64,000 nucleotides of DNA, from IMG/VR virus record IMGVR_UViG_3300023174_000046, positions 153,414 through 217,413 of that record; one strand, given 5' to 3'. Below are positions 37,428 through 62,225 of this stretch, piece by piece; position 1 is the first letter of the stretch; each line of letters begins with the position of its first letter. Made by a program: the position numbers and the translations under genes. Below the pieces are notes generated by a model that was not told the DNA's origin, did not search any database, and saw only the letters and a list, made by a program, of their open reading frames with translations.

Positions 37428-37649
37428 TTATTTAAATTTTTCTAGTACTAACTGCTTGAGATTGTATGCTGTGGAGTCGGCAATAACATCATATTCATTG
37501 GAATGCTTTTCAATAAATTCCAACAATTTTATAGCATCTTCTTTTGAAAAGCAAACACCTTCCAAATTAGCACCAATCTGATCATTTATTGATTTAGTTA
37601 AACGCTTGCTTTTGCGGTAAGATTCAAAGATCAGATCGTTATCTTGCAT
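37428..37649 (-). CDS. Putative internal head protein (LIFE leader)
   Basis: MQDNDLIFESY; late TAAATA. Confidence 0.6.
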   Translation of the reverse strand: MQDNDLIFESYRKSKRLTKSINDQIGANLEGVCFSKEDAIKLLEFIEKHSNEYDVIADSTAYNLKQLVLEKFK

Positions 37650-37850
37650 TATATTAATATTTAATAAGATTAACTCTTGAATTCTTGATATAAGAGCTTA
37701 ACTTTATTATATGAACGAAAAATTGAGCTACAGACAGATACTAGTAGCTGTTTTAACATATCTGAAAGAAACCGACCCAGGCACTAATTTTCTTGATTTA
37801 GACAAAGAAGAGCAAGATCAAGTAATAGAAGATGCTTTGGAGTACATGGA

Positions 37851-38063
37851 ATGAAGCAAGAAGATATTCTAGACAAAAAAGTTCTATTTCAAAACGTTCC
37901 TGTGAATCGCTTTGCTGTGCATGAAGGCAAGGTAAAAGAGTTTTCACCCACTGGCAAATGCGTTAAAATTGATCATGAATGGTTCTTGCTCAACAACATT
38001 AGATTTTTGGAGGTATTCACTGAAGATGAAAGACCATCTCTTCGCTTTGTTTGCAAAACTTGA
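37851..38063 (+). CDS. Hypothetical protein
   Basis: ORF track. Confidence 0.55.
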   Translation: MKQEDILDKKVLFQNVPVNRFAVHEGKVKEFSPTGKCVKIDHEWFLLNNIRFLEVFTEDERPSLRFVCKT

Positions 38064-38218
38064 TAACCACACCTGGGAGATGTTCCTATTTTGGTCTGGA
38101 TTTATGATTACAGGCATTATAATCAAATAATGACACATAAAAAATATGAATGGTTCATTGTGTTTCTGGGGGTTATCGCAAACATTGTGCTCATTCTAAA
38201 CGCCATACACCATTGGTA

Positions 38219-38479
38219 ATGAACCAAGACAAACTCATAGAAAAGCTCTTGAGAAAGATTCAAGAGACAGACAACACAAGAGCATCTGTTTGGCTTATAA
38301 ACCATTACATGGAAGAGGCCATTAGCATATGCACTAGCGATTTAGCAGATTCTGCTATATACGCAGATGGCGTGGCGGCCATTGAAGAAGTATTAGAGCA
38401 GAAGGATTATAAAGATGCCCTGGTAATTGCAGAAGATACAGCACAAGAGATGTTGTATGACATGGGTTTTGATAGTTAA
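38219..38479 (+). CDS. Hypothetical acidic protein
   Basis: Likely start MNQDK. Confidence 0.55.
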   Translation: MNQDKLIEKLLRKIQETDNTRASVWLINHYMEEAISICTSDLADSAIYADGVAAIEEVLEQKDYKDALVIAEDTAQEMLYDMGFDS

Positions 38480-38527
38480 CTTGCACTTGACATAATCTAA
38501 ATTTTCAATTATTATTAAATAATTGAT

Positions 38528-39415
38528 ATGGCGTTTGATAAAGACTTTAAACTGCTTCAAGAAGAATACAGCAACATGTATTCAAATGCTGAAAACGCAG
38601 AAGGTTTAGCTTCTACTGTTGGCATTCTTCCATGGAAAGAAGTGCCTGAAGAAGAAAAGAACAAAGCATATGAGCTAATAAAGGCTCATAATGATGCTGT
38701 GGTTAACCCCAAAGATGGTCCAGAAAATTATTACTTCATTGATGTAACTGGCAAGCATCAAGTTTATTATACATTTTGGAGATTCAGAATATTGCCAGCT
38801 GCAATACGCAATTGGATCAAGAATCCCATTTACTTTGGCAATTTATCCACAGACATTGTTGCATCTGTTCAAAAGGCTTTGTCAAAGAATATTGTAAAGA
38901 ATGTGCGGGTAGAATTGTATGGTGATGAAACTAGAGAACACTTGATAGGCAGAAGCAAGTCTACCCCTAAATTTACTTTTGGCAAATACAGAGGCAAATC
39001 GTTCCCTGATGTGTATCTAGAAGATCCAGGTTACTTTGCTTTCTTAGCCAAGAACGCTGATCCCAAGTATGCATCTACAGATAATGCTCAAGCCATTCAA
39101 GCTTTTGCGCAAATGTATTTTGATGATGTCACTAAAAAGAACCAGGAAACTTCTACTGCACAATTTGTGGGCAAACCAGGTGATCGCTTTGAAGGTGAAT
39201 TAGAACTTTATAATTTAAAAGAGGTTCCTGGTACCAGAGAGCAAGATGGTTATAATGTGTACAAATTGAAAGATGCTCAAGGCAATAAATATATTACATA
39301 TGCGTTTCCTGCTTCAGAAGTAGGTACTAAGATGAAAGTTAGAGCCAAGATTCAAGCACATAAAGAAATTTTAGGTGTCAAATTTAACAAGATTGGATAT
39401 GTAAAACCTGTATGA
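38528..39415 (+). CDS. Late protein with FGKYRG (DUF3820-like) motif and C-terminal OB-like domain
   Basis: FTFGKYRGKSF.DV...DPGYF; TAAATA at 38516. Confidence 0.65.
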   Translation: MAFDKDFKLLQEEYSNMYSNAENAEGLASTVGILPWKEVPEEEKNKAYELIKAHNDAVVNPKDGPENYYFIDVTGKHQVYYTFWRFRILPAAIRNWIKNPIYFGNLSTDIVASVQKALSKNIVKNVRVELYGDETREHLIGRSKSTPKFTFGKYRGKSFPDVYLEDPGYFAFLAKNADPKYASTDNAQAIQAFAQMYFDDVTKKNQETSTAQFVGKPGDRFEGELELYNLKEVPGTREQDGYNVYKLKDAQGNKYITYAFPASEVGTKMKVRAKIQAHKEILGVKFNKIGYVKPV

Positions 39416-39999
39416 AAAAGTTCAAAGAATTTTTTACAGAAGATTTTGATGATAATTCTGATGATTTAGATAGCAAATTAATAACAATGCATAAGCAGAT
39501 GCAAAAAAGAAGACAAATGTCCGGCAAGTCTTTACAGTCTGTAGATGCTGCTCCCTTAATGGCACCAGGATACTTTAAAGATTTTAATTTAAGTACAATT
39601 GCTAAGGGGCTGAGAAGATATTATAGAAGTATTATAGTTGATTATTATTCTAAAATTTTTAAAACTTTTAAAGATAAAATTGAACCTATATCCCAACAAG
39701 GAAAATGGGAGATGGACCCAGTTAAACAAGCTGAAAGCTTTAGAAGCTTAAGGTCTGCAGGCGGTCCAAAGTTTACCTTGTGTGGTTTTAATTTTGATAA
39801 AAGATATGGCTTTACTGATGAAGATAGACAAATGAATAATATCCTGGTCAATAGAATGTATGAAAAGATACATGACACCTTGCCCAAACTACTGGGCAAC
39901 AAAGCAAAAGCTATTGATATAAAGATTGACAACGACCCTTGGTATACAGGGCTTACATGTATAACAATAAATATATATTTGAACTATGAAAACGTTTAA
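39412..39999 (+). CDS. Putative internal head protein with T4-type capsid-targeting sequence
   Basis: MKKFKEFFTE resembles T4 CTS MKTYQEFIAE. Confidence 0.65.
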   Translation: MKKFKEFFTEDFDDNSDDLDSKLITMHKQMQKRRQMSGKSLQSVDAAPLMAPGYFKDFNLSTIAKGLRRYYRSIIVDYYSKIFKTFKDKIEPISQQGKWEMDPVKQAESFRSLRSAGGPKFTLCGFNFDKRYGFTDEDRQMNNILVNRMYEKIHDTLPKLLGNKAKAIDIKIDNDPWYTGLTCITINIYLNYENV

Positions 40000-40252
40000 A
40001 GAATTTTATTTAGAAGAAAAAGCTGGTGCAAGATGCACCAAGGTAACAGGTCAGCAATCATCTACACGGAAAGATAAGAAGTATATGCGCTGTGCACGTG
40101 TAAATGGTAAATTAAAAAGAGTGCATTACGGTGATCCTAATTTACGTATTAAGAAATCTAACCCCAAGAAAAGAAAGTCTTTCAGAGCTCGTCACAAGTG
40201 TTCTTCTGCCAAACCAGGAACAGCTAAGTATTTCAGCTGCAAAAATTGGTGA
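39986..40252 (+). CDS. Basic putative internal head protein (CTS leader)
   Basis: MKTFKEFYLEE; VHYGDPN...RKSFRARHKC...YFSC. Confidence 0.7.
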   Translation: MKTFKEFYLEEKAGARCTKVTGQQSSTRKDKKYMRCARVNGKLKRVHYGDPNLRIKKSNPKKRKSFRARHKCSSAKPGTAKYFSCKNW

Positions 40253-40614
40253 AAACGTTTAAAGAGTTTTTTATCGAATCAAAGCAAAAGCATTCTAAAC
40301 AAGAGGCGGGTTACGTGGCGCATACTGTTAAAGGTCAAAGATGTGATCAATGTACTATGTGGAGAGCTCCTAATAAATGCTCTGCAGTAGCAGGAGATAT
40401 CAAACCTGAAGCATGGTGCAAGTGGTGGAAGCAAAGCCACAGAAAAGATTTAAAAGAGAAGAGCATACATGATCCTGTAAGGCCTGGTATATTAAAGCGT
40501 CAGACCAAAGGCAAAATGACCTGCTCCAAAGCAAGAAGATTAAGGGCTAAGCAAAAGAATAAAGGTAACAATACAGCTAAAGCAGCTCAACGCTACTTAA
40601 ATTATCACTGTTAA
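40249..40614 (+). CDS. CTS-leader protein with HiPIP-like 4-Cys domain plus a basic module
   Basis: GTG start (M)KTFKEFFIE; CDQC...KC..V.G.I.PEAWC. Confidence 0.7.
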   Translation: MKTFKEFFIESKQKHSKQEAGYVAHTVKGQRCDQCTMWRAPNKCSAVAGDIKPEAWCKWWKQSHRKDLKEKSIHDPVRPGILKRQTKGKMTCSKARRLRAKQKNKGNNTAKAAQRYLNYHC

Positions 40615-41543
40615 GCCCACTGTGCTGTAAACGGCGTTGTGTAGTTTGTAAATGTGTTTGTAGCTGTCTTGTAAAGCTCAAAGCTATTAACTTGTATATA
40701 AGCCTGGTAACCATCATCCACATTGATGAATGTGCCATTAACCACAAACACATCTGCTGTGAGTGCTGGTGAGAACAGTGTCATACCAGCAGTTAGATTA
40801 GCTCTTGCTTGTGTGCTTGTAGCAGCACGAATAGATTCTGTTGCAAGCTTCATTCTTGTACCAATACCAGAAGTTGTTTGAAGCGAAGTTACATAATTAG
40901 CTGTTAAAGCTTTTCTTGTTGTTGTATCATCCCATAGAATTTTATTCAAGACATATTGCTGATAGTTGTTACCTGTACCGTAACCGGCGCCACCGGTACC
41001 AAAAGGAAATACATCACCACTTAATGGTGCAGTACTAGAAAGAGCATTGCTTGCTGTACCATAAACAGCAGGATTTACTAATCTATTCACAGCAACACCA
41101 ACAGCACCGCAAGTGTTTGAAAGTTCATTGCCTTGACCTCTTCTGAGCATGTAACCCAAATAGCCGCTCAAAGAGCATACACCAATATGAGGAGCAGAAA
41201 ATAACATTAATGCACCATTGGTAGCATATTGTATGTGTGAAGCCCATGCAAAGAGTGCAATTCTCCCAGTATGCGGGTAACCACCAATGCCACCTGCAAA
41301 AAATGGTCCTTGAAAATCATTCAAAGTAGCAGGCATTTGACCAATATTGTTATTGTAATAAGCTGGTGCATTTGCATCATCTGAACAAATTGAATCGGCT
41401 AATAAAACATTGTTGGCGCTATACCCACATAATGTTTGAATAAACGTTTTGCAATATCTGCCAAAATCTTCCACAAGAATGGCTCCAGGGTAGGCAGAAG
41501 CTGCTGTTACTATTGAGGTGTATGTTGATTGTGATATTGGCAT
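40611..41543 (-). CDS. LCIB-family (theta-type) carbonic anhydrase-like protein, copy 2
   Basis: ICSDD, GPFFAGGIGGYPHTG, APHIG, RRGQ, TCGA. Confidence 0.8.
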   Translation of the reverse strand: MPISQSTYTSIVTAASAYPGAILVEDFGRYCKTFIQTLCGYSANNVLLADSICSDDANAPAYYNNNIGQMPATLNDFQGPFFAGGIGGYPHTGRIALFAWASHIQYATNGALMLFSAPHIGVCSLSGYLGYMLRRGQGNELSNTCGAVGVAVNRLVNPAVYGTASNALSSTAPLSGDVFPFGTGGAGYGTGNNYQQYVLNKILWDDTTTRKALTANYVTSLQTTSGIGTRMKLATESIRAATSTQARANLTAGMTLFSPALTADVFVVNGTFINVDDGYQAYIQVNSFELYKTATNTFTNYTTPFTAQWA

Positions 41544-41551
41544 AAAAAATA

Positions 41552-42652
41552 TTAGTTGAGTTGTAATCCTGATTTAAATTGTGTAGTAAAGTCTTCGAAG
41601 GTATCTGTGGTCTTGTTGTATCTTAAGAAGTTTGTTACATCTGCATAAGCTTTAAATCCATCATCCACGTTAATAAATGTACCAGTGCTCAAGAACACAT
41701 CAACATTTCTGCCAGGGAACGCTGTTCTATAAGCAAGCTTGAATGTGCTGTTATTGTCAGGTTTAGCAATAATATTGAAAGCAGAGTTGCGAATTGCTTC
41801 TGTGGCCAATATCATTTGCTGCCCGAAGTCTGATGTTGCACAAATGGCTGTGCGTGCTGTTACATCATCATAAATTGCCTTGACAAGAGTATAGAATTGA
41901 AAATCCGATGCATTTGTTAACAATACATCAAGTGGATCAGGGCTAGGCCATTGAGGAGCAGGGCCGCTTACACCATTGTTTCTGATCCAATCAACAGCAG
42001 CTGCTGCAGCACCACAAGTTGCAGAAAGATTACCATAATTTTGACCGCGGCGTCTCATGTAACCTACTTGACCATCGCGAGTGATGCCAATGTGAGGGGC
42101 TATGTACAAGAATAGAGCACCTCCACTTGTGACGTGTGATGCATAAGCAAGGAGCCCTGTGGTACCAGTGTGTGGGTAACCATCTAAGCCGCCACCCATG
42201 AATGGTCCAAGGAAAGTTTGCAATGATTGAGGCATTTGACCGAGATTATTAATATTATTAAACACTGGTCCGTTCACATCATCAGAGCAAATAGATGATG
42301 AAAAGAGAACATTGCTTGGAGTGTAAGCAGCACTTACCGATTGAATATAAGTTTGTACGCGAAGACCAAAGTTTTCAGCTGTTGCAGCAGTTGGGTATGT
42401 CTTTCTTACCACATCACCATAATCAAGTTGTTGCGAAACTGGACCAGAATCAGATGTTAAACTGGAACCATGCATTAAGTTGTTATTCTCTAGTTCTGCA
42501 CGAGCTGCTTGTACTCTTTCTTCTATGATTTGTTGTTCAAATAAGAATTTCTTTTGAAAATCGGCTGATTGTGGCCTGCTAGGCACAACTACGGGGTTGC
42601 GAGGGCGACCATCATATTGCTTTAACCCATCTACATATTGCCTAGGAATCAT
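41552..42652 (-). CDS. LCIB-family (theta-type) carbonic anhydrase-like protein, copy 1, with N-terminal extension
   Basis: ICSDD, GPFMGGGLDGYPHTG, APHIG, RRGQ, TCGA; start MIPRQ 5 nt after TATAAATA. Confidence 0.82.
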   Translation of the reverse strand: MIPRQYVDGLKQYDGRPRNPVVVPSRPQSADFQKKFLFEQQIIEERVQAARAELENNNLMHGSSLTSDSGPVSQQLDYGDVVRKTYPTAATAENFGLRVQTYIQSVSAAYTPSNVLFSSSICSDDVNGPVFNNINNLGQMPQSLQTFLGPFMGGGLDGYPHTGTTGLLAYASHVTSGGALFLYIAPHIGITRDGQVGYMRRRGQNYGNLSATCGAAAAAVDWIRNNGVSGPAPQWPSPDPLDVLLTNASDFQFYTLVKAIYDDVTARTAICATSDFGQQMILATEAIRNSAFNIIAKPDNNSTFKLAYRTAFPGRNVDVFLSTGTFINVDDGFKAYADVTNFLRYNKTTDTFEDFTTQFKSGLQLN

Positions 42653-42657
42653 GTAAT

Positions 42658-42679
42658 TATTTATATTTAACAATAAATA
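42658..42679. promoter_or_regulatory. Back-to-back T4-type late promoters
   Basis: TATAAATA on minus (42658-42665) and TAAATA on plus (42674-42679), each 5-6 nt from an ATG. Confidence 0.75.
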
Positions 42680-42685
42680 ATATCA

Positions 42686-43435
42686 ATGAATAATAAAGAA
42701 AATCGTCTTATATTTGAAGCTTTTGCAACAAAGCTAATTAAAGAGGATATGCCTTATCCTACATTTGCCAAGCTTGCCAAGCATGCTTCGCCTAAATCGT
42801 CCAAGGAAAAAGATGAAAATGAATACAAAGATCAAATGCCTGATAGCAAAGAAGAATATTCAGCTCATGATTATGCCAAAGAAATGGAAGCCAAGCCCGG
42901 TGAACAAGAAGAACAACCACAAACACATGCGGACATGTCTCATGATCAAAAAGAAGCTGCAATGCTTCTCAAGAAGTTTGGTTACACTTTCTTTGACATG
43001 GACATGCACGGTCGTGATTACGTTGCTTATTTTGTGAACGAAAAGCTCCCTCACAATCATGCAAAGCATGGCATCAAAGTGAAGCATGATGGCATCATAG
43101 TTGGTCCTGCAGATTCCCCTTTCATTGGCAAGAAAGTAAAAGAATTAATTCCTTCAGAAGATGCAGAAGAGCAAGCAGAAGCAGTAGCAGTTTCTGGCCA
43201 ATACAAATACATCTATTTTCTAGATGCTGAAGAATGTTATTCCATTAACCCTTATCAAATTGTGCCGTTCAAGAAAGCAGTAAGAGAGACAAGCAATTGG
43301 ACCAAAGCGCGTGTAATGGTTGGTGAAGATATTGTTCAAATTCTTGGCAAGAGTGTTAAAGATCAAAGAGCTTGGTACATTGTAGGTGCAGAAGCTCCCA
43401 ACGATCATGTATTTGAAGTTTTGTTAGGTAGCTAA
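42686..43435 (+). CDS. Putative internal head protein (LIFE leader)
   Basis: MNNKENRLIFEAF; acidic EDAEEQAE linker. Confidence 0.65.
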   Translation: MNNKENRLIFEAFATKLIKEDMPYPTFAKLAKHASPKSSKEKDENEYKDQMPDSKEEYSAHDYAKEMEAKPGEQEEQPQTHADMSHDQKEAAMLLKKFGYTFFDMDMHGRDYVAYFVNEKLPHNHAKHGIKVKHDGIIVGPADSPFIGKKVKELIPSEDAEEQAEAVAVSGQYKYIYFLDAEECYSINPYQIVPFKKAVRETSNWTKARVMVGEDIVQILGKSVKDQRAWYIVGAEAPNDHVFEVLLGS

Positions 43436-43436
43436 T

Positions 43437-43985
43437 ATGGATAGAGAATCAAAGCTTATTTTCGAAGCATATGCATTGAAAGGTTTAGCTGCAGGTAAAA
43501 CACTTGCTGATATAGCCAAGAAGCATGGTGTTAGTATAGAAGTGATGCAAACAGCTCTGCAGAGAGGCATGAAAGTTGAACACGAGCACACAGGTAATGA
43601 AGCTGCTGCAAAAAAGATTGCAATGGATCATTTGTTTGAAGATCCAGAATATTATGCAAAACTTGCCAAGATAGAGGGTGAAGAGAGTGAGCAAAATGAA
43701 GAGCGCAGATTGGATCCTAAATGCTGGAAAGGCTATCATAAATCTGGTACCAAGCTCAAAGATGGTGTGCGTGTCAACAATTGTGTTAAATCACAAAATA
43801 ATGAAGAAAAGCTTGTAGGTGGTCAGAAGAAACTGGATGCCAATCATGATGGTAAGATCTCTGGCGCAGATTTTAAAATTCTCAAGAAGCATAAAGGTGA
43901 AGAACAAGAAGAAATGCAATGCCCATATGCAGCAAAAGGCTGTAAATGTAGTGAATGTGAAGAATGTGCTGCCAATCAGGCTTAA
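43437..43985 (+). CDS. Modular putative internal protein (LIFE leader; DUF5661-like, CWKGY, EF-hand-like and Cys modules)
   Basis: EHEHT...IAMDHL.EDP.YY.KL; CWKGY...NCV; LDANHDGKISGADF. Confidence 0.7.
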   Translation: MDRESKLIFEAYALKGLAAGKTLADIAKKHGVSIEVMQTALQRGMKVEHEHTGNEAAAKKIAMDHLFEDPEYYAKLAKIEGEESEQNEERRLDPKCWKGYHKSGTKLKDGVRVNNCVKSQNNEEKLVGGQKKLDANHDGKISGADFKILKKHKGEEQEEMQCPYAAKGCKCSECEECAANQA

Positions 43986-44027
43986 TTAGCTTGATTATTT
44001 TTTAAAATCATTTAATATCATTCGTTA

Positions 44028-44234
44028 ATGAAATATATATTATGTTTGTTGACACTAGCCATGGCTGGGTGCTCCACAGCACATGTATATAATCCAAAAC
44101 AACTATCAGAAGATTCTGTTAACTGGGAATATGATAGAGCAAGATCTTTTAATACCAACAACAATCAACTGGATTCACCAGACGGTTCTGTGCAAAAAGG
44201 TAACGGTATAAAGTTCTTCAAAGCAACATATTGA
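44028..44234 (+). CDS. Small lipoprotein
   Basis: Lipobox LAMAGC. Confidence 0.65.
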   Translation: MKYILCLLTLAMAGCSTAHVYNPKQLSEDSVNWEYDRARSFNTNNNQLDSPDGSVQKGNGIKFFKATY

Positions 44235-44337
44235 TGCCTCTGTTTGACTGATTCACTTGTAATTAAAAAATAATTTTAGTCGACTATATATCAAGAAAAA
44301 CATTGATATTTTCAGTAATATCATGTATACTATAATA

Positions 44338-44958
44338 ATGAGTGAAGATTTAGTCATGCCAGCACCAACTGTTACCATCATAAATGGTTCATTAGGAGGA
44401 AGAACTGGCAACACTAACAATCTCCTGCAAAAAGTTAAGAAGATTATTCTTAAGAAAAACAGTGATACAAATATTAAAGTTGTTCATTTATCACCATCTT
44501 TTGATTGGCTAAAGGTTAAGAGGTGCATTAAAGCTAGTAATATTCTCATTTTCTGTACTGGAACATATTGGGACTCTTGGGGTTCACCCATGCAGCAATT
44601 GTTCGAGAAAATGACACAAATTGAAGGTAAAAAGCATTTGTTAGGCAAACCTGCAGGCGCTATTGTTACAATGCATTCAGTTGGCGGTAAAGAAGTATGC
44701 TCCAGAATTCTTGGCAATCTTGTAGGGCTGGGTTGCATAATACCTCCCTTCACAGGCTTTGCATATGCATACTCAGATCATATTGCGCATCGCTCCAGAG
44801 TATCAGGCAAGAAGCTGTTGGATGATGTGTGGCATATTGACGATCTGGAAGCTTTTGTGCACAACCTATTTGAAGCGCATAAAGGTACAAAGGATTACAT
44901 GGTCTGGGATTACCTGGATACGCAAGCAATGGACCCCAGTTATGTTTGGCTTAAGTAA
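44338..44958 (+). CDS. NADPH-dependent FMN reductase / flavodoxin family
   Basis: INGS....GNT, TGTYW.S, LLGKPAGAIVT. Confidence 0.75.
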   Translation: MSEDLVMPAPTVTIINGSLGGRTGNTNNLLQKVKKIILKKNSDTNIKVVHLSPSFDWLKVKRCIKASNILIFCTGTYWDSWGSPMQQLFEKMTQIEGKKHLLGKPAGAIVTMHSVGGKEVCSRILGNLVGLGCIIPPFTGFAYAYSDHIAHRSRVSGKKLLDDVWHIDDLEAFVHNLFEAHKGTKDYMVWDYLDTQAMDPSYVWLK

Positions 44959-45768
44959 TTTATGTGGGCAGAAAAATTTTCGAGTATATTGTAGTTGTAA
45001 TAATTTATTTTTTAATTGCACTTGTTAAGTGTTACCATTATTATTGGTGGATAAGATACGAAAGCAAAGGAATATTAACAAGAAAGATTAAAAAATATGT
45101 GGGATCCAATTAGTTTGTTTTATATGATGTGGGCACTTAACACAGGTCTTCCTGATGCAAGACTTAATGTTACAGAGGTGATTCAAGCGCGTGAAAATAA
45201 AATTGTAATTGAACACATCGTAGAATCAGTTTCTTTGAGAGAAGGAATCTAATATAGCTTGAATAGAAAATAAAAGAGTATATAATAAAAACATGACAAT
45301 AACAAACAATAATGTAGCTCTTGATATGGTTTTGACGTCTATTGTTAATAACAGATCTATTTTAAATAGCATAACTTCTGATATTAATGAGAGATTCAAA
45401 GTAAAGTTGAACGAACAAGATTTGGAAAATTATTTGAGTGTAATTGAAATGAGGAAAAAATAAATGAACTTTTTATATGAAATGTACACAACAAAGAATG
45501 GCAGTAATGTTTTTCTTGGTTATAAAAAAGTAGCAGCAGATTGCAAAGAAGATGCTTTACTGTGTGCCCAAGAAGCTGTTGATCCAGATGTGAGGTTGTA
45601 CCCTGTTTATATCAATGAGGCTGATCCGTACGCTCGGTAAATGGTTTAATGCTGTAGTTAAAATTGTAGTTAATGATTGTTCAGTTGGGTTGGCACTAAT
45701 AATTATTGGCTTCATTTTAGGCTGGTGTTCCCAAAGCATTTGGATTATACTCTGTAAGATAATACATT

Positions 45769-46080
45769 ATGTTCGAGTTTCTTAAAAACTTCTTTGCAGG
45801 ATCAAAATATAAGATATATGTTACAGGGCCAAATACTTTAGCAGAACTATTAACACAGTTTGATCAGCCACCCAAAGAGAAAACTAAAGAAGATATCATT
45901 CGTGACTATACCATAAAAGAAACCATGGCTTCATTGGAATTATCATATCTAAAAGAAGATCCTTCAATTTTCTTTACAGGCAATCAAAAATGGTTTGATG
46001 GTGAAGGTAATAAGTATTTTGACTTTGTGCCTTGTGCATTAAGACCGGAAGTTTTGTATTGCTCATATGGCAAAAATTAA
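45769..46080 (+). CDS. Hypothetical protein
   Basis: ORF track. Confidence 0.55.
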   Translation: MFEFLKNFFAGSKYKIYVTGPNTLAELLTQFDQPPKEKTKEDIIRDYTIKETMASLELSYLKEDPSIFFTGNQKWFDGEGNKYFDFVPCALRPEVLYCSYGKN

Positions 46081-51621: not shown

Positions 51622-51622
51622 T

Positions 51623-54555: not shown

Positions 54556-54735
54556 TCCTCAAAGTGATGGAACAATATGATGGGCGTTTGCCTGTCTTCA
54601 GTGTAGTGAAAGAAGTTACTGCATGTGATAATTGCGGGTTCCAGAAAGATGAGATAATCAAATCTTTTGATACATATGAAGAAGCAGATGCTTATTGCAG
54701 TAGCTTAATTGCAGAAGGCAAAGCCAAAGGATAAC

Positions 54736-55831: not shown

Positions 55832-56146
55832 ATGAGCATGCTAGCAATGCAAATGAGTGAACACATCAAATCAAACATTCTATCTTCTACAGCTTCACTC
55901 TGGCATGCCATGGGCATTGAAGTAACACAAGATAAAATCTGGAATGATCTGGCCCGCAGTGGCAATGGTGGCATTGAAGCCACATTCTATGTTACTGGAT
56001 TGGATAATGTGGTGCGAAAAGAATTTAATGCGCATGTGGAAACGCTCAAATCAAGCAATCCATGCATTCAAGAATTCAAAGTCAAGTTCAAGAGACCAGA
56101 GAAAGAAGTTCGTTTCTTTATTAAGATTGCAAATGAAACACATTAA
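55832..56146 (+). CDS. Hypothetical protein
   Basis: ATGA overlap. Confidence 0.55.
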   Translation: MSMLAMQMSEHIKSNILSSTASLWHAMGIEVTQDKIWNDLARSGNGGIEATFYVTGLDNVVRKEFNAHVETLKSSNPCIQEFKVKFKRPEKEVRFFIKIANETH

Positions 56147-56444
56147 GAACTTTGTATTTGACTTTGTTGGTTTCTTTATCATAGTGCTTGGCTCCTTTTT
56201 TATGCTTGTAGCAGAGATTGTGACTGTAGCAAAGCAAACATTAGAGAACATATTCTATGATGTCATTTGGCCTGCAATGGTAGAAGCATTCACTGATGTG
56301 TGTCTCATATGCATGATTGTATCACAAGGTGTTTGTGAGGCATTATCCAATTGCTTCCTTGGTGTGTCCAAATTCTCGCTTTGGATTGCACAATATTTTC
56401 ACAACAAATCTGAGTCTCTTATCACTGTTACTTGGCGCGATTAA
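56133..56444 (+). CDS. Hydrophobic hypothetical protein
   Basis: Likely start MKHIK. Confidence 0.5.
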   Translation: MKHIKNFVFDFVGFFIIVLGSFFMLVAEIVTVAKQTLENIFYDVIWPAMVEAFTDVCLICMIVSQGVCEALSNCFLGVSKFSLWIAQYFHNKSESLITVTWRD

Positions 56445-56634
56445 CTAAATAATTGCATGACATATGCGCGCTTAAGAGACATCATTGGTATGATGAATGG
56501 TGCACAATTGAATGCACCTGTTAAAGTGGTTGTGGCTGGCAAAGAGATTTTCATTGACAGAGTGGATGCAGAAGATAACAATGCAAATGCTCCTTATCTC
56601 AATTCAAACAAAGACGTTTAATTTTTGAACAAGG

Positions 56635-57705
56635 TCACAAGGACCATTTTTCAGTCAAATAAGAATTAACTGCAATCAATTCTGCATCAGTCAGAATTCT
56701 TTCATAAGCAAAAAATTCTCCAATGACACCATTGAAGTAGGCAATTTCAGAAACAAATCTGCGTCCAATGGCAACTTTGGCAGCATTGGTAGTAGATGAA
56801 TTGCCTTTGGTTTGAAAATCAGGATCTGATCCTGCAGCAGCACCATTGAACAATATGTCCACTTCGCCTGCTGCATAGTTAATTTTGGCTGTTATGATGC
56901 CAGGAGCAGTGTTATTCTTGAATGTGGCAGTGCTGATATCAGCAGGTGCTCCTTTGTCGTTCAAATCAGAATCAAGTCTCCTGCCTCCAGCTGCAAAATA
57001 CCATCCTTCATCATCAGCAGGGGCACCTGGTATCACAGATGGATTGCTCATGAATTTGATTCTGGAACCATTGCCTCCTCCTGGGCTAGGTCTGGTGGTG
57101 GTGAAAATAGCTTCAGGAAGTACAATGCCTGTGTTAGGATTGCCAAACTGTGCCACACAAACCAATGTGATGCCCGCCACATTGTTGGCAAAAGTGAGGG
57201 AGTTCGCATTACCGTTCAAATGATTGCCACTGTTGGAATCAAATTTTAGGTAATTCATGCCTTGGTAGGATGACAGAGCTGGACGAATGAGGCTGTTGGA
57301 TTGTTCAAAGTGTCTGTTGTTTGTGCTCAAGTCCAGCCATGTGGCCACTGGTGTGTTGAGAGCACAAGGGTTGCCAGATGCATCCAACACACTGACTCTG
57401 CGACTTGAATCAAGCCATATGCCTGGATTTGCAGCAGGGGGCACAAGTGGGTTGCTTCCAGCGCTGCCTGGATCTGCTCCAATGCCCATGGCCGCATCTC
57501 TGGATGCACCATGGTGTTCCAATTGTTTGCGAGCTTCTTGTATGATGCGCATTTGTTGCTGTTGATCAAAAGCCATGCTATCATTAATCATTCGCTTCTG
57601 TTGTTGATTGGGAAGCGCCGGACGCCAAGTGTTGGTATCTGGAGGATAAACTACATTTCTCCCCGGATCAGTGAGCGCATTTAAATAGTCATCAAACCAG
57701 TCCAT
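56635..57705 (-). CDS. Late protein: MDWFDDYL leader module + LamG/ConA-like domain
   Basis: WLDSS...VATWLDLS...F.G.IGE...Y.R.LT..E...V..YL..KW. Confidence 0.75.
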   Translation of the reverse strand: MDWFDDYLNALTDPGRNVVYPPDTNTWRPALPNQQQKRMINDSMAFDQQQQMRIIQEARKQLEHHGASRDAAMGIGADPGSAGSNPLVPPAANPGIWLDSSRRVSVLDASGNPCALNTPVATWLDLSTNNRHFEQSNSLIRPALSSYQGMNYLKFDSNSGNHLNGNANSLTFANNVAGITLVCVAQFGNPNTGIVLPEAIFTTTRPSPGGGNGSRIKFMSNPSVIPGAPADDEGWYFAAGGRRLDSDLNDKGAPADISTATFKNNTAPGIITAKINYAAGEVDILFNGAAAGSDPDFQTKGNSSTTNAAKVAIGRRFVSEIAYFNGVIGEFFAYERILTDAELIAVNSYLTEKWSL

Positions 57706-57713
57706 AACAGTAT

Positions 57714-60086
57714 TTATCCTGGTAAATTCTTAACAACAGTTATATTAGTACCACCTGCTATGCTTTGACCTGCACCAGCAGTCCAGGTGGCATCGCTGGC
57801 TCGAGCATATATTGTACGGCCATTGAGAGTACTTAATGAACCTGCTTCATACACAGTCAATGGAGCAAAGGAACTGATGGTGAGCAAGCTTGTGCAGTTG
57901 TATAAAAACAATCCTCCAATAGATGCAATGCCATTGGGTATGAGTATATTGGTTAAAGACGGGTTTTGTGCAAATGCATAACTGCAAAGGATTGCAGTGC
58001 TAGTGTTTGCTATGTTCACAGCAGTTAATGAGTTTAAATTGAATGCAAATCGACCAACTATGGACACGCTGCCGGGTATGCTCACAGACTTTAACGCATT
58101 GCTTGCAAATGCACCATCACCAATGTATGTTACATTGCTGGGTATATTCACTGCAGACAAATTGTTGCCTTGAAATGCATTGGTACCTATGCTTGTCATA
58201 TTGTTAGGTATAGTTACAGCAGACAATTGATTGTATAAGAATGCACCTATACCTATGCTTGTCATATTGTTAGGTATGTCTACAGCAGACAATTTGTTTT
58301 GTGCAAATGCATAGTCAGGTACAAAATTTATACCAGTCCCCAGTGTAAGGATGGATATATTGTTGCTTTGAAATGCACCTCCACCCATGCTGGTGACAGT
58401 GTCAGGTATGCTCACAGCAGACAATTTGTTGCCGTAGAATGCAAATAAATTAATATTTGTCACGCTGTTGGGTATGGTCACAGCAGACAAATTGTTTAGG
58501 CTAAATGCATAATTTCCTATGGTTGCAACGCTACTGCCCAATGTCAAGAAGGATATGGTGTTGCTTTGAAATGCATAATTGCCAATGGCTGTCACACTGT
58601 TGGGTATGTTCACAGCAGATAATTTCTGGTTATTGAATGTACTTGAGCCAATATATTGCACACTGTTGCCCAGTGTCAAGGAGGATATGTTGTTGCTTTG
58701 AAATGCAGTAGAATCAATATATGTAACTGAGTCTGGTATGTTAACTACAGTTAATTTGTTGTTACCAAATGCATACTCTCCTATGTATGTGACACCATTG
58801 GGTATGGTTGCAGCAGACAAATTGTTGTTGGCAAATGATTGATATGCAATGTTGGTCACACCATTGGGTATGACAATGTCATTCAATCGATTGTCCTTGA
58901 ATGCCTGGTATGATGTGAAGGACAGACCAGTTGGCAGTGTTACAGCAGACAATGCATTGGCAGCAAAAGACAAAGATGCACCAGCTGCACCTTGCTTGGG
59001 CAAACTAACTGCACTCAACTTGTTGTTGGTGCAATACAAGTTTGATATATTCCTACTGCTAGCCACATCCAGGTATGTTAATGCATTGTAATTGCAATTC
59101 ATTTCTTTTAATGCAGAAAGGCTTGACACATCCAGAGATGACAGACTGTTGTAATTCACATAAAGATATTGTATGTTGTTGCATCCTGAAAAATATATGG
59201 AAGAAAGAAGCAATCCTCCTGTTCCAGAGCTGTAATAGCCTTCATAATTATTAACAAAAACACTGATTAGCTTAGGAAGATTGGTGAAAGTAAAAGATGT
59301 GAATTGATTATTTTGCATATAAATAACTTCTAAATCCGTGCATCCAAAAAGATTCACAGATGATAGCCGATTGGATGCAATATTAACAGAGTTTATTTTG
59401 TTGTTGTTGGAAAGATTCAGTGTGGTAAGTTTACCGCCGGGCGCCTGTAAAGATGTTAAGTTCGGAACATTAGTCAGATTGATGGCGGTTAAATTATTGT
59501 TGATACAGTAGAGAGAATGAAGACTGCTGAGACCAGATGCTTGAACAGAAGATAGAACATATTGAAAACCGGCATCATGTTGATAGCTACAATCCAGTAA
59601 CTCTAGTGCAGGCATCTGAGCAGACAGATTGTTCAAAGATGTAAACCAATTAGAATTGCAGTTCAACTGCTTCAGCTTGTGCAAGCCAATGACAGGCAAA
59701 CTTGTAAGTTTATTGCTATTGCAATCTAGTATTTCAACATTTTGCAAATCAAACCCCGTGGTAGGGTCAATTGAATCCCACCCACCCAGCATAGTGGCTA
59801 TTTGCAAATGCTTTACCACTGGTGACAGTATCAGGTCTTCCTGTTCTATGTTATTGTATGACACGTTTAGTTTTGTTGCCAAGGGAAACTGTGTGGCATC
59901 AAAATAATCAAACAAATTGCTGCTCACATCCAGAGTCACAATATTATTTTTACCTGTGATTGCTTGCATCCAGCTGTTCAGCTGACATTCAGCCATGGTC
60001 AAATCCAACTGAGAACAACGGGATGCATCCACACCCTGCATGGGTATTCCTGCAACGTATAACCGGTTAATTTTACCTGTTTTCAT
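57714..60086 (-). CDS. Leucine-rich repeat protein (internalin-type LRR + BspA/LRR_5)
   Basis: L.C..N.L..L repeats then IP.SVT.IG..AF..N.L repeats; in frame with the upstream ORF across one TGA. Confidence 0.88.
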   Translation of the reverse strand: MKTGKINRLYVAGIPMQGVDASRCSQLDLTMAECQLNSWMQAITGKNNIVTLDVSSNLFDYFDATQFPLATKLNVSYNNIEQEDLILSPVVKHLQIATMLGGWDSIDPTTGFDLQNVEILDCNSNKLTSLPVIGLHKLKQLNCNSNWFTSLNNLSAQMPALELLDCSYQHDAGFQYVLSSVQASGLSSLHSLYCINNNLTAINLTNVPNLTSLQAPGGKLTTLNLSNNNKINSVNIASNRLSSVNLFGCTDLEVIYMQNNQFTSFTFTNLPKLISVFVNNYEGYYSSGTGGLLLSSIYFSGCNNIQYLYVNYNSLSSLDVSSLSALKEMNCNYNALTYLDVASSRNISNLYCTNNKLSAVSLPKQGAAGASLSFAANALSAVTLPTGLSFTSYQAFKDNRLNDIVIPNGVTNIAYQSFANNNLSAATIPNGVTYIGEYAFGNNKLTVVNIPDSVTYIDSTAFQSNNISSLTLGNSVQYIGSSTFNNQKLSAVNIPNSVTAIGNYAFQSNTISFLTLGSSVATIGNYAFSLNNLSAVTIPNSVTNINLFAFYGNKLSAVSIPDTVTSMGGGAFQSNNISILTLGTGINFVPDYAFAQNKLSAVDIPNNMTSIGIGAFLYNQLSAVTIPNNMTSIGTNAFQGNNLSAVNIPSNVTYIGDGAFASNALKSVSIPGSVSIVGRFAFNLNSLTAVNIANTSTAILCSYAFAQNPSLTNILIPNGIASIGGLFLYNCTSLLTISSFAPLTVYEAGSLSTLNGRTIYARASDATWTAGAGQSIAGGTNITVVKNLPG

Positions 60087-60089
60087 GTG

Positions 60090-60596
60090 TCAAATGCCTC
60101 CATTCACATCACAGGATGTCACTTGCACCAAGCGCGGTGCAGCATATGGATCATCTGGTGCAATGTAGTGTTCAAAATATAACTCATCACCAGGGACACC
60201 TGAGCCAATGACTTCAGATGTGCCATCCCAATATTGCACAAATGCATACCCCGTGGATGTGTATACATATGCATATACATATTGACCTGGATCAACATTG
60301 TAATACAAAGACACAGTCTCTGCCACAATAGGTGCGGCAGGACTGCCTGGATCTGCTCCAATGCCTTCTGCCACATCTGCATGCGACATGTGACCATGTG
60401 TGTGTTCCTCCAGCTCATGTCTGGCCTCTTGAATCATCTTCATTTGTTGCTGTTGATCAAAAGCCATGCTATCATTGATCATTCTTTTCTGTTGTTGATT
60501 GGGACGAGCAGGGCGCCAAGTATATGTGTCTGGGGGGTAGTTAACTGTTCTGCCGGGATCGGTGAGCGCATTTAAATAATCATCAAACCAGTCCAT
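60090..60596 (-). CDS. MDWFDDYL leader module + N-terminal part of the LRR protein
   Basis: N-terminus duplicates 56635..57705; late TAAATA. Confidence 0.7.
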   Translation of the reverse strand: MDWFDDYLNALTDPGRTVNYPPDTYTWRPARPNQQQKRMINDSMAFDQQQQMKMIQEARHELEEHTHGHMSHADVAEGIGADPGSPAAPIVAETVSLYYNVDPGQYVYAYVYTSTGYAFVQYWDGTSEVIGSGVPGDELYFEHYIAPDDPYAAPRLVQVTSCDVNGGI

Positions 60597-60834
60597 ATCT
60601 AATTATTTATGAATAAATAAAATAAAAATAGGCTGGAGCTTGAGTGAATAATCACATATAATAACAACATGCCCAAGAAGAAAGTAACATTAAGAACGGT
60701 GAGAGAGCTGGGTAAAAGGATTGCAAAGAACAAGCCTTTTGTAGGTGAATGCATTGACCGAACTTCTGGTAAAATCATTAATTTGGACGGTCGGCTTGTG
60801 AGAAAATTAGGAAAGAAATCTAAATAATATTGAT

Positions 60835-61347
60835 ATGGTTAATGATAGTCACTTGATATTTGAAAATTATGTGGATGGCATCTCCAAAAGAAAAGGTGAG
60901 CTGGCCGGAAACATCATGGACATTGTGAGATACGGTATTCCTTCCAAAGAAGAGTTTATTAAGATCAGACAAGAACTGCATGACAAAACAAAAGAAATTT
61001 TAGACAGAGGTACTCCTGCAACAGAAGAAGAGAAACACCGAGGCAGGCAGTTGATAGGCATGATAAGATCCTACAGAGCTCAACATCCCAATGATCCTCC
61101 TGTGGCTAAAAACCTGCATCATGCAGAAGAGAGTGCAGAAAATACACAGCCTGCAGATGTATCCAATGAAATCAGAATCAAATTGGGACAAGCCTATAAT
61201 ATAGTCAAAGGTTTAATTGAGCTGCTGGACAAGACACCCTCAGAACAAACACCATACAATGAGATGGCCATAACCCATCTGGCCAATCTGGAGGAAGATT
61301 TAAAAGAATTATCCATGATGCTTCAAGACAGAATGCTGGGTAAATAA
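60835..61347 (+). CDS. Putative internal head protein (LIFE leader)
   Basis: MVNDSHLIFENY; EESAEN linker; TAAATA 60821. Confidence 0.65.
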   Translation: MVNDSHLIFENYVDGISKRKGELAGNIMDIVRYGIPSKEEFIKIRQELHDKTKEILDRGTPATEEEKHRGRQLIGMIRSYRAQHPNDPPVAKNLHHAEESAENTQPADVSNEIRIKLGQAYNIVKGLIELLDKTPSEQTPYNEMAITHLANLEEDLKELSMMLQDRMLGK

Positions 61348-61352
61348 TTGAT

Positions 61353-62225
61353 ATGAGAAAAGATGATCATTTGATATTTGAATCTTTTATTAATAAGAAA
61401 GGTGATGCTGGCGTTGGTCGGCCGGCTTCAGAAGAAGAAATTAACGTTAGTAAAGCTGATCTGAACAAGGATAAACAATTGAGTGATTATGAATTGGCCC
61501 GGGCTAAAGCCATGGACAAAGCCATGCACAAAGATGAACAAGCAGAGAGCAAGTCTACAGGCCGAGGTGCAGTGAATGACATAGTGGTTTCAGAGTTGCA
61601 TAAGATACATACAGCATTGAATCAGATGTCTAGCATGATTGATTTAAATCCTAGTGCAGAGGTGGATCAATTGTTATCTAAGATAAGGGATGTGGCTGAT
61701 ATGCTAATTGCAGAAAGGCCTGCAGAGAATGAAGAGAGTGCGGATGAAAGAAAAGAGCGGGTACAAAGAGGATGGGATATAAACAAGAAGAGATGGGCTA
61801 AATGGAAGATGGAGAATCCAGAGGCTGCTGCTAAACATGCTGCAAAGAAAGCTACTGGTAAAGAAGAGAGTGCAGAGAATGAACCACATGGTTATCCTCA
61901 GGGAATGACAGCTATTCAGAACTTGTTGTTAAATGAATTGAAGAAGTATGGCTTTGAATTAACAAGAATTAGTCATACAGATAAAGAGAGAGACAAGTAC
62001 CCAACGGTATTCATGCATAATAAGAGTGGACCGATGCATAGGGTAGTAGAGATTAGCGGTATGGGTGAGATCAATGGTGAGCCTTATAAGAAGTATCTGG
62101 CTGATTTAAAAGAGAAAATCAAACGTTTATCTGGTATAAGACCTGAAAATCCAGAAGATCCTTATTATGATACATGGCAGAGCATTGCTCAAGATCATGC
62201 TGGTGAAGAAGAAGAAGATTGCTAG
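61353..62225 (+). CDS. Modular putative internal head protein (LIFE leader)
   Basis: MRKDDHLIFESF; EQAE, ENEESADE, EESAENE linkers; ADLNKDKQLSDYE. Confidence 0.65.
   Translation: MRKDDHLIFESFINKKGDAGVGRPASEEEINVSKADLNKDKQLSDYELARAKAMDKAMHKDEQAESKSTGRGAVNDIVVSELHKIHTALNQMSSMIDLNPSAEVDQLLSKIRDVADMLIAERPAENEESADERKERVQRGWDINKKRWAKWKMENPEAAAKHAAKKATGKEESAENEPHGYPQGMTAIQNLLLNELKKYGFELTRISHTDKERDKYPTVFMHNKSGPMHRVVEISGMGEINGEPYKKYLADLKEKIKRLSGIRPENPEDPYYDTWQSIAQDHAGEEEEDC

What the first reader, a model, noticed from the sequence alone, without database searches (positions are those of the whole stretch)
37428..62225. Second leader family (M-x4-6-LIFE-x-[YF]) on dispersed late genes built as acidic-linker polyproteins
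Seen: MQDNDLIFESY (37649, minus), MNNKENRLIFEAF (42686), MDRESKLIFEAY (43437), MVNDSHLIFENY (60835), MRKDDHLIFESF (61353) and the variant MAFDKDFKLLQEEY (38528). All are late-promoter linked and their bodies are unrelated. Modules are separated by ENAE, EDAEEQAE, EESEQNEE, EESAEN and ENEESADE; 43437 strings four mini-domains this way. Inference: a distinct capsid-targeting signal plus an E-x-[AE]-E prohead protease site that releases small effector peptides.
Basis: partly seen in the sequence, partly recalled or inferred. Interest (0 to 1): 0.65.

Follow-up and report, generated by a model that had tools for sequence, protein, structure and literature searches.

The report
Capsid-cargo leader on shuffled cassette genes
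An uncultured lake-water relative of phage T4 puts the same 10-residue N-terminal tag, which looks like the cut-off tips of its own head-scaffold and head-protease proteins, on several late genes built from small interchangeable modules joined by a conserved acidic joint, probably a quickly reshuffled set of proteins packed into the phage head.

Summary
L-[ILV]-F-E-x-[YFW] occurs six times in the six-frame translation of the 217-kb genome, each time 5-7 residues after the start Met of a late-promoter-linked ORF. Five are in the window and one lies outside it.

The genome is a T4-like phage with a gp21 (S77) prohead protease. In about 170 environmental relatives the leader is a strict 10-mer, M-x-x-D-x-x-L-I-F-E|A, with synonymous codon variation, so selection acts on the protein. 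It matches the clade's inferred protease sites: MCP WC-[LIV]-x-E, gp21 L-[LI]-V-E, gp22 [IV]-L-K-E-A. It has the length and Glu/Ala ending of the T4 capsid targeting sequence. This fits a second CTS-type propeptide, but nothing was measured.

The acidic linkers are also real. E-[DN]-A-E and E-x-E-E bound discrete modules that are shuffled among relatives. They do not fit the protease motif and are not enriched in the canonical substrates, so cleavage there is unsupported.

Two results are new. First, the linker is constrained at the nucleotide level (GAR RAT GCA GAR, with Ala coded as GCA at 43 of 44 sites). Second, lake metagenome contigs carry in-frame variants broken exactly at the leader end and at linkers. 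The linkers therefore look like in-frame recombination joints.

Verdict: a new variant of a known kind, moderately interesting.

The parts
37428..37649 (-). LIFE-leader gene, 73 aa. Leader MQDNDLIFE is at 37623-37649 (Glu at residue 9). Promoter-like TAAATATT is at 37656-37663.
   Evidence: weak DUF7336 hit only
38528..39415 (+). Variant-leader gene, 295 aa. The N-terminus ends in L-L-Q-E (38528-38563) and is followed by SNAENAE (38582-38602). TAAATAAT is at 38516-38523. The C-terminal part has an ExoX-like_C hit. Homologues start MKFDNLVDNILE.
42686..43435 (+). LIFE-leader gene, 249 aa. The leader is at 42686-42718. Junctions are GEQEE (42899-42913) and SEDAEEQAE (43154-43180), the latter holding the canonical 12-mer at 43157-43168. 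TAAATAAT is at 42674-42681.
43437..43985 (+). LIFE-leader gene, 182 aa, co-transcribed with 42686. The leader is at 43437-43466. Modules in order: DUF5661, a CWKGYHK-type module, an EF-hand-like module, and a Cys-rich tail. Junctions start at 43674 (EGEE, followed by SEQNEE) and lie at 43896-43913 (GEEQEE).
60835..61347 (+). LIFE-leader gene, 170 aa. The leader is at 60835-60864, junction AEESAE at 61123-61140, and TAAATAAT at 60821-60828.
61353..62225 (+). LIFE-leader gene, 290 aa. The leader is at 61353-61382. Junctions are DEQAE (61533-61547), AENEE (61722-61736, start of ENEESADE) and EESAE (61863-61877). TAAATAAT is at 61341-61348. Natural in-frame variants break at 61382/61724 and at 61541/61872.

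Best explanation
These are late genes for cargo proteins of the phage head, the functional counterpart of T4's internal proteins.

Each starts with a 10-residue propeptide, consensus M-[RND]-[KQR]-D-x-[HK]-L-I-F-E|A-[LFY]. This propeptide mimics the N-terminal tips of the phage's own prohead protease (L-[LI]-V-E) and scaffold ([IV]-L-K-E-A). The inference is that it docks the protein into the scaffolding core of the prohead and is then cut off after Glu10 by the gp21-type S77 protease.

The bodies are combinatorial strings of small modules of about 20-130 aa, joined by conserved acidic joints (E-[DN]-A-E or E-x-E-E). The joints are flexible, and the E-[DN]-A-E type is also conserved as DNA (GAR RAT GCA GAR). 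They act as in-frame microhomology at which modules are deleted, inserted and exchanged between paralogues and co-infecting relatives. The result is a fast-evolving, arms-race-type cargo repertoire.

Shown: the motif and its placement; protein-level selection on the leader; the protease gene; the match to the clade's inferred cleavage motif; modularity; nucleotide-level constraint on the linker; in-frame natural variants broken at the leader end and at linkers.

Inferred: packaging, cleavage at Glu10, the recombination mechanism, and any effector function.
For: - Placement: 6 of 6 motif occurrences are at N-termini of late-promoter-linked ORFs.
- Leader conservation: the leader is conserved in 109 of 120 homologues of the 61353 protein, and 56 of 64 homologues of the 42686 protein keep L-I-[FY]-E at residues 7-10. 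Glu is at position 10 in 106 of the 109.
- Protein-level selection: Leu, Ile, Asp and Ala codons in the leader vary freely.
- Protease and capsid genes: gp21 S77 protease (E 1e-32) and gp23 (E 3e-94) are in the genome.
- Cleavage motif: T4 gp21 cuts after L/I-x-E, and the T4 CTS is about 10 aa, MKTYQEFIAE (PMC9026906, PMC8442874). In the clade, MCP propeptides are conserved up to WC-[LIFV]-x-E and then become variable. Clade gp21 starts M-x-L-x-L-[LI]-V-E-T-P and gp22 starts ..[IV]-L-[KR]-E-A-T.
- Same leader on unrelated bodies: it sits on at least three unrelated body families, including a conserved 290-aa protein present in 4 relatives.
- Leaders are exchangeable: one body carries a T4-type leader in some phages and a third leader type in another. 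DUF5661 carries a T4-like leader in Caulobacter phage Cr30.
- Modularity: discrete module sizes. Cassette presence or absence falls exactly between linkers. Homology breakpoints lie within 3 aa of ExAE in 29% of cases against 6% at random.
- Structure: AF2 gives confident modules, pLDDT below 50 at the EESAE linker and just after DEQAE, a dip at ENEESADE, and pTM 0.37.
- Nucleotide-level constraint on the linker: GCA at 43 of 44 sites against 39% elsewhere in the same genes, and TCA at 13 of 14. The 12-mer occurs only in these genes.
- Natural variants: lake-metagenome contigs hold in-frame variants joined at E10 and at linkers. One joins linker to linker through a shared GCAGAG hexamer.
Against: - No virion proteome, N-terminal sequence or expression data exist, and no cultured relative carries these genes.
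- The proteins are mildly acidic (pI 5.3-6.7), unlike the basic T4 internal proteins.
- The leader shares no sequence with the T4 CTS beyond length and the Glu-Ala end.
- The structure-based test of protease-leader binding gave no verdict.
- The linker-to-linker joint rests on one contig of depth about 6 with only 24 letters on its shorter side.
- Glu wobble positions in the linker vary freely. That is odd if DNA identity alone were selected.
- No module has a recognisable function.
Confidence: 0.55

Rival explanations
1. The proteins are true polyproteins: after targeting to the prohead, the gp21 protease, or a second Glu-specific activity, cuts after the last Glu of every E-x-[AE]-E joint and releases 20-130-aa peptides that are ejected with the DNA.
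For: Every joint ends in Glu, the P1 residue of all known gp21-type proteases (PMC9026906, PMC5694885). The joints are strictly conserved as protein across 233 unique sites and are predicted to be exposed or disordered. The modules have the size of T4 IPI*-like proteins, and small pieces would pass the tail channel more easily. phiKZ and SPN3US head proteins are cut at several sites (PMC9026906).
Against: P3 in the joints is D/N/E, whereas the clade's MCP, gp21 and gp22 sites have L/I/V. E[DN]AE is not enriched in the head-module ORFs (gp21, gp22, gp23 and neighbours) of 80 relatives and is absent from gp21, gp22 and gp23 of this genome. T4 internal proteins are cut only once (PMC8442874). Codon-level conservation of the joint is not needed for a protease site. 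Some modules are always C-terminal.
Confidence: 0.25
2. The leader is a protein-protein interaction tag for something other than the prohead core, for example another late assembly, a chaperone, or a host target after lysis. It is not removed.
For: Only late timing and conservation are shown. The proteins are acidic, unlike T4 internal proteins. AF2 places the leader in a low-to-moderate-confidence helix that continues into the body.
Against: The leader has exactly the length and the [LI]-x-E|A ending of the propeptides of the clade's protease and scaffold, and of the T4 CTS (PMC8442874). Leaders are exchangeable on one homologous body, including a T4-type CTS-like 10-mer that also ends in Glu10.
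Confidence: 0.15
3. The shared N-terminus is a nucleic-acid feature. It could be a translation-initiation region for the nearly leaderless late mRNAs, or a stretch of homology kept by recombination. On this view it is not a peptide signal.
For: Late promoter-like motifs lie only 3-6 nt before the ATG, so the first codons could matter for initiation. Metagenome contigs break at the leader.
Against: The conserved residues L-I-F-E-A are encoded by many synonymous codons: six Leu codons, three Ile codons, GCA/GCT/GCC for Ala. Other late genes such as gp18, gp19 and gp21 lack the sequence.
Confidence: 0.05

Closest known systems
[quoted passage not shown]
   Same: An N-terminal 10-mer on otherwise unrelated, non-essential, variable proteins. 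It ends in hydrophobic-x-Glu followed by Ala. The genes are late, and the genome has the gp21 S77 protease that removes the CTS in T4 (PMC9026906, PMC8442874).
   Different: There is no sequence similarity beyond the ending. The bodies are acidic and multi-modular, not small basic single proteins. A separate T4-like CTS family (MKTFKEF..E) coexists in the same genome. Targeting and cleavage are untested.
N-terminal propeptides of T4-type prohead core proteins gp21 and gp22
   Same: T4 gp21 starts MNEPQLLIE and T4 gp22 starts MLKEQLIAE. The clade's gp21 starts with L-[LI]-V-E at residues 5-8, and its gp22 has [IV]-L-K-E-A at about residues 7-11. This is the same M-x(3-6)-[LIV]-[LIV]-x-E layout as the LIFE leader.
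   Different: Those are single-copy essential assembly proteins. Here the tip is copied onto a variable set of accessory genes.
Multiply processed head and inner-body proteins of phiKZ, 201phi2-1 and SPN3US
   Same: Many head proteins are cut after Glu at short motifs, sometimes at several sites within one protein (PMC9026906, PMC5694885).
   Different: Their motif is S/A-x-E and was established by mass spectrometry. Here the joints do not match the clade's inferred motif, and no processing data exist.
Linker-mediated modular shuffling in phages (Botstein linkers; PeSL cassettes of RB49/phi1, PMC2839356; from my own knowledge, the conserved motifs of T-even tail-fibre genes)
   Same: Short conserved sequences flank exchangeable modules. 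Breakpoints between relatives fall at them, and recombinant forms are seen in natural populations.
   Different: PeSLs are intergenic elements of about 100 bp with a promoter and terminator. Here the joint is about 12 nt, lies inside the reading frame, and also encodes a fixed peptide.
Polyvalent proteins of phages and conjugative elements (PMC5512222)
   Same: Many small unrelated domains are strung in one polypeptide in elements involved in conflict with the host.
   Different: Those are very large proteins with recognisable enzymatic domains. The modules here are tiny and unannotated, and the strings carry a common leader and a fixed joint motif.

Membership tests
T4-type CTS / gp21-removed N-terminal propeptide | Located at the extreme N-terminus, about 10 (10-19) residues long | tested here: met
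   Glu at residue 10 in 106 of 109 leaders. In the window the leader is 9-11 residues long.
T4-type CTS / gp21-removed N-terminal propeptide | Ends in the protease motif L/I-x-E | tested here: met
   The leader has I-F-E at residues 8-10, followed by A/S/N. The motif is taken from PMC9026906. The clade's MCP, gp21 and gp22 show [LIV]-x-E.
T4-type CTS / gp21-removed N-terminal propeptide | Genome encodes a gp21 (Peptidase_S77) prohead protease | tested here: met
   PF03420, 110 bits, at genome 46984-47658(-).
T4-type CTS / gp21-removed N-terminal propeptide | Same leader on otherwise unrelated proteins | tested here: met
   The leader is found on at least three body families plus the 73-aa protein. 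Leaders are exchanged on homologous bodies.
T4-type CTS / gp21-removed N-terminal propeptide | Sequence resembles MKTYQEFIAE | tested here: not met
   The LIFE leader differs from it. The neighbouring genes at 39412, 39986 and 40249 do resemble it.
T4-type CTS / gp21-removed N-terminal propeptide | Sufficient to carry a protein into the prohead and is cleaved there | not testable with these tools
   The complex-prediction run of gp21 with residues 1-40 gave no verdict.
T4 internal proteins (IP) | Small, highly basic, DNA-associated proteins cut only once | tested here: not met
   pI is 5.3-6.7 and the bodies are multi-modular. Only one 47-aa module is basic (pI 9.7).
Prohead-protease-processed polyprotein | Internal sites match the specificity seen in the phage's canonical substrates | tested here: not met
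   The joints are E-[DN]-A-E or E-x-E-E. The canonical sites are [LIV]-x-E. The joint motif is not enriched in head-module proteins.
Prohead-protease-processed polyprotein | Sites lie in exposed linkers between independently folding units | tested here: met
   pLDDT is below 50 at 68-72 and 171-178, with a dip at 121-130, between confident modules. pTM is 0.37.
Linker-mediated modular shuffling | Conserved short sequence at module boundaries, conserved as DNA beyond what the coding requires | tested here: met
   GCA at 43 of 44 sites, TCA at 13 of 14, and T-ending D/N codons at 38 of 39. Breakpoints are enriched near the motif.
Linker-mediated modular shuffling | Recombinants with junctions inside the linkers exist | tested here: met
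   There is an in-frame 110-codon deletion joining two linkers through GCAGAG, and a module replacement between E10 and a linker, both in lake contigs. Each rests on a single contig.

The most novel reading that the evidence does not exclude
The phage clade runs a dedicated in-frame cassette system. A fixed 12-nt joint (GAR RAT GCA GAR) would serve both as the recombination site that builds combinatorial strings of mini-domains and, as the peptide E-[DN]-A-E, as a Glu-specific processing site. One leader would then load a whole string into the prohead, where it is cut into many small ejected effectors. This would be a polyprotein strategy and a diversity generator not described for T4-like phages.
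Probability: 0.2. Interest if true: 0.8.

Novelty: new variant of a known kind. Interest (0 to 1): 0.6.

Why it matters
T4's capsid targeting sequence is the textbook way a phage loads accessory proteins into its head and delivers them into the host. It is also used as an engineering tool.

A second, unrelated-looking leader that copies the tips of the protease and scaffold would show how such tags arise. It would also give a simple rule for finding head cargo in uncultured phages: a 10-mer ending in [LIV]-x-E|A, shared with gp21 and gp22.

The cassette genes would then mark the arms-race payload of an abundant lake phage clade. About 600 capsid-gene relatives matched in IMG/VR, and the best 80 are 69-95% identical.

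The in-frame, DNA-conserved joint, together with natural recombinants, is a compact and testable example of linker-mediated domain shuffling inside genes.

Tried and rejected
- Complex prediction of gp21 with residues 1-40 of the 61353 protein gave no verdict (score 0.00, controls not run). This is not evidence either way.
- Foldseek of the 61353 model against the PDB found nothing at E <= 0.001. There were only weak dsRBD-like rows (E about 0.2) for the alpha-beta-beta-beta-alpha module at 179-260. The two Atlas searches gave no usable lead.
- Pfam and PHROGs scans found DUF5661 in the 43437 protein and ExoX-like_C in the 38528 protein. The other hits are families of unknown function or fall below the curated cut-off.
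- tblastn of three LIFE proteins against 50,697 phage records gave no match. blastn of 42686-46000 also gave none. The search for related loci with the 42686 protein found nothing in IMG/VR.
- A search for LIFE-x-[FY] DNA in T4, Cr30, B23, Pelagibacter phage Mosig and pf16 gave six hits, five of which begin with a Phe codon rather than Leu. Their positions were not checked against gene starts, and none was followed up. The strict leader pattern was not run on these genomes.
- An antisense or guide RNA pairing with the joint was considered. No reverse-strand copy of the 12-mer exists in 155 kb of related loci.
- Avoidance of hidden stop codons as the reason for GCA/TCA was rejected by inspection. 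GGT-GAR and GAT-GAR, which create TGA, occur at position -1.
- General codon bias was also rejected. GCA is 39% elsewhere in the same genes and 51% before Glu genome-wide.
- The staphylococcal-nuclease gene next to LIFE genes in two relatives has a signal-peptide-like N-terminus, not a leader.
- The AF2 model of the 43437 protein was confident only for the DUF5661 module. The count of four mini-domains therefore rests on the alignment.
- Literature searches for DUF5661 and for the leader and joint strings returned nothing.

Full report
**What the window is**

The window is the last 64 kb of a 217,413-bp virus record. CheckV rates the record complete, and its G+C content is 36%. It encodes a T4-type prohead protease (Peptidase_S77, 110 bits, genome 46984-47658 minus strand). 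It also encodes a gp23 major capsid protein (312 bits) and homologues of gp17, gp18, gp19 and gp20. A gp22-like scaffold gene sits between gp21 and gp23.

The capsid protein is at most 37.5% identical to that of any cultured phage, the nearest being cyanophages, Pelagibacter phage Mosig and Pseudomonas phage pf16. In IMG/VR about 600 stretches matched, and the best 80 are 69-95% identical. Near-identical DNA is found in lake and freshwater metagenomes from at least three studies. This is an uncultured freshwater T4-like myovirus.

**Checking the observation**

All quoted N-termini are present. Across the six-frame translation of the whole genome, L[ILV]FE.[YFW] occurs six times, always 5-7 residues after the start Met of an ORF. 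The sixth is a 295-aa ORF at genome 78487-79374 on the minus strand, outside the window.

The count itself is close to chance, with about 2 expected. The placement is not.

The phage's late promoter-like motif is TAAATA[AT]T, lying 3-6 nt before the ATG. It precedes gp18, gp19, gp21 and about 70 ORFs in all. It precedes four of the five window LIFE genes, the 38528 variant, and the sixth gene. Gene 43437 starts one base after the stop of 42686.

**The leader in relatives**

A word-based search with the 61353 protein returned 120 environmental proteins. Of these, 109 begin with the leader, and Glu is at residue 10 in 106 of them. The consensus is M-[RND]-[KQR]-D-[DN]-[HK]-L-I-F-E-A-[LFY], with D4, L7 and E10 nearly invariant.

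A second search with the 42686 protein returned 64 proteins with different bodies. 56 of them keep L-I-[FY]-E at residues 7-10, five begin with variant 10-mers, and three are cut at the N-terminus.

A strict DNA pattern for M-x-x-D-x-x-L-I-F-E hit all five long related records tried, with no hit for the reversed control. It uncovered a conserved protein of about 290 aa, the type found at genome 78487, that carries the leader in four relatives.

In 21 genes for which DNA was available, the leader's Leu, Ile, Asp and Ala codons vary synonymously. Selection therefore acts on the peptide, not on the RNA or DNA.

**Why the leader looks like a prohead propeptide**

- T4 gp21 cuts after L/I-x-E. The T4 CTS is a 10-mer, MKTYQEFIAE, cut before Ala (PMC9026906, PMC8442874).
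- The LIFE leader is a 10-mer ending in I-F-E followed by Ala.
- T4's own gp21 and gp22 begin MNEPQLLIE and MLKEQLIAE.
- In 80 relatives the capsid propeptide is conserved up to WC-[LIFV]-x-E and becomes hypervariable right after it.
- In the same relatives gp21 begins M-x-L-x-L-[LI]-V-E-T-P, and gp22 begins with [IV]-L-[KR]-E-A-T around residues 6-12.

The leader therefore copies the tips of the two core assembly proteins and fits the clade's inferred cleavage rule.

Leaders also behave as exchangeable cassettes. The IHDPVRPGIL...LNYHC body carries a T4-type 10-mer (MKTFKEFF.E) in this window and in L013 and L019, but an MKFDDLVNSILE leader in L020. DUF5661, which sits behind the LIFE leader in gene 43437, sits behind MKDFKSFL in Caulobacter phage Cr30.

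None of this measures packaging or cleavage. The single structure-based binding test gave no verdict.

**The acidic joints**

In the 61353/60835 family every protein carries E-[DN]-A-E. There are 273 sites, 233 of them unique, typically in the context [GK]-[SAG]-E-[DN]-A-E-[NSGHD]. In the 42686/43437 family the joints are E-x-E-E, for example GEGEE, ENEE and EEEE. Some proteins mix both families.

Cutting at the joints gives modules of fixed size, about 22, 46, 48, 71-77, 85 and 127 aa, that recur in many different orders and neighbourhoods. An alignment shows cassettes present or absent exactly between joints. A 98%-identical relative of the 42686 protein carries, at its C-terminus, the EF-hand-like module that in this phage sits in gene 43437.

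Internal homology breakpoints among the 120 proteins lie within 3 aa of an ExAE motif in 29% of cases, against 6% for random positions.

AF2 gives confident modules and low confidence just after DEQAE, around ENEESADE and at EESAE, with pTM 0.37. The picture is beads on a string.

In this genome E[DNS]AE occurs 5 times in about 320 ORFs, 4 of them in these genes.

**Are the joints protease sites?**

They end in Glu, as all gp21-type sites do. However, P3 is D/N/E rather than L/I/V. The motif is absent from this phage's gp21, gp22 and gp23. In 107,000 aa of head-module proteins from 80 relatives it occurs 4 times, all at one helical position of gp22. T4 internal proteins are cut only once (PMC8442874). 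Cleavage at the joints is therefore possible but unsupported.

**An unexpected nucleotide-level signal**

At 44 unique E-x-A-E sites from ten loci the DNA is GAR RAT GCA GAR.

| Position | Codon at the joint | Same codon elsewhere in the same genes |
|---|---|---|
| Ala | GCA at 43 of 44 | 39% |
| Ser just before the motif | TCA at 13 of 14 | 18% |
| Asp/Asn | T-ending at 38 of 39 | 71-78% |

The Glu wobble positions are free. Genome-wide, Ala before Glu is GCA only 51% of the time. The 12-mer occurs only inside these genes and only on the sense strand, in 155 kb of related loci.

**Natural variants**

Lake-metagenome contigs were laid on 60600-62400. They are fragmented at the leader and at the joints, and they include two in-frame variants of gene 61353.

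- In the first, codons 11-124 are replaced by seven codons (AFRNKLQ). The breakpoints fall right after Glu10 (61382) and at A|ENEESAD (61724). Depth is about 18, similar to the reference form.
- In the second, 110 codons are deleted between 61541 and 61872. This joins DEQ|AE to EES|AE through a shared GCAGAG hexamer. Depth is about 6, from one contig with 24 letters on its shorter side.

Other contigs diverge from the reference right at a GKSENAE joint.

Taken together, the joints behave as in-frame recombination joints. This is conceptually like Botstein's linkers and the PeSL cassettes of RB49/phi1 (PMC2839356), but the joints are about 12 nt long and lie inside reading frames. Why GCA in particular is fixed while the Glu wobbles vary remains unexplained.

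**Function of the cargo**

This is unknown. Only DUF5661 and an ExoX-like C-terminal motif are recognised. One module has an alpha-beta-beta-beta-alpha fold with weak dsRBD-like matches. The proteins are mildly acidic, and one 47-aa module is basic. No cultured phage has them.

**Verdict**

The capsid-targeting reading of the leader is the best-supported explanation, by analogy and by its match to the clade's own propeptides. The protease-site reading of the linkers is not supported, and a recombination-joint role has direct though thin evidence. This is a new variant of a known kind, a CTS-type leader, combined with an unusual in-frame cassette architecture.

Noticed in passing
window 39412-39999, 39986-40252, 40249-40614 (+): Three adjacent genes start with a T4-type CTS-like 10-mer, MK(K/T)FKEF(F/Y)xE, with Glu at residue 10. 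Relatives put the same leader on a nucleotidyltransferase-like protein (L010 5564).
   Followed up: partly
L013 2154, L019 1710, L020 195; window 38528: There is a third leader type, MKFD(N/D)LV(D/N)(N/S)ILE, ending in I-L-E. It sits on homologues of the 38528 protein. In L020 it sits on a body that carries the T4-type leader elsewhere. Similar N-termini occur at genome 70393-71181(-) and 71178-71501(-).
   Followed up: partly
whole genome; for example window 42674-42681, 60821-60828, 61341-61348: The late promoter-like TAAATA[AT]T lies only 3-6 nt before the ATG of about 70 ORFs, including gp18, gp19 and gp21, with no Shine-Dalgarno sequence. Late mRNAs would be nearly leaderless.
   Followed up: partly
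window 40611-41543 (-) and 41552-42652 (-): Two paralogous proteins match LCIB_C_CA (PF18599), the limiting-CO2-inducible beta-carbonic-anhydrase-like family, at E 4e-20 and 7e-31. The second has a late promoter-like motif. The pair is syntenic in relative L021.
   Followed up: partly
window 56635-57705 (-), 60090-60596 (-), 57714-60086 (-): Two late genes share the N-terminus MDWFDDYLNALTDPGR and about 70 further residues, then diverge. One has a Laminin_G_3-like C-terminus. Between them lies a 790-aa BspA-type leucine-rich-repeat protein. These are likely swappable fibre or adhesin genes.
   Followed up: no
genome 73046-73296 (-), outside the window: An 84-aa late ORF repeats the capsid-protein segment GGSLGTFQTS(N/D)W downstream of an L-M-E, resembling the start of mature gp23.
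   Followed up: no
window 37174-37426 and 22431-22522: There is a tRNA cluster, Ile(TAT), Met(CAT) and Arg(TCT), directly beside the first LIFE gene, plus tRNA-Leu(TAA) further upstream.
   Followed up: no
L018 4286-4699, L010 2075-2488, genome 72587-73012 (-): GIY-YIG (SegE-like) homing-endonuclease genes lie within about 1-2 kb of leader-bearing genes in several relatives and in this genome. A link to the local gene shuffling was not tested.
   Followed up: no
L019 4567-4989, L021 8667-9089: In relatives, a staphylococcal-nuclease-family gene with a signal-peptide-like N-terminus occupies the slot that gene 43437 holds in this window.
   Followed up: partly
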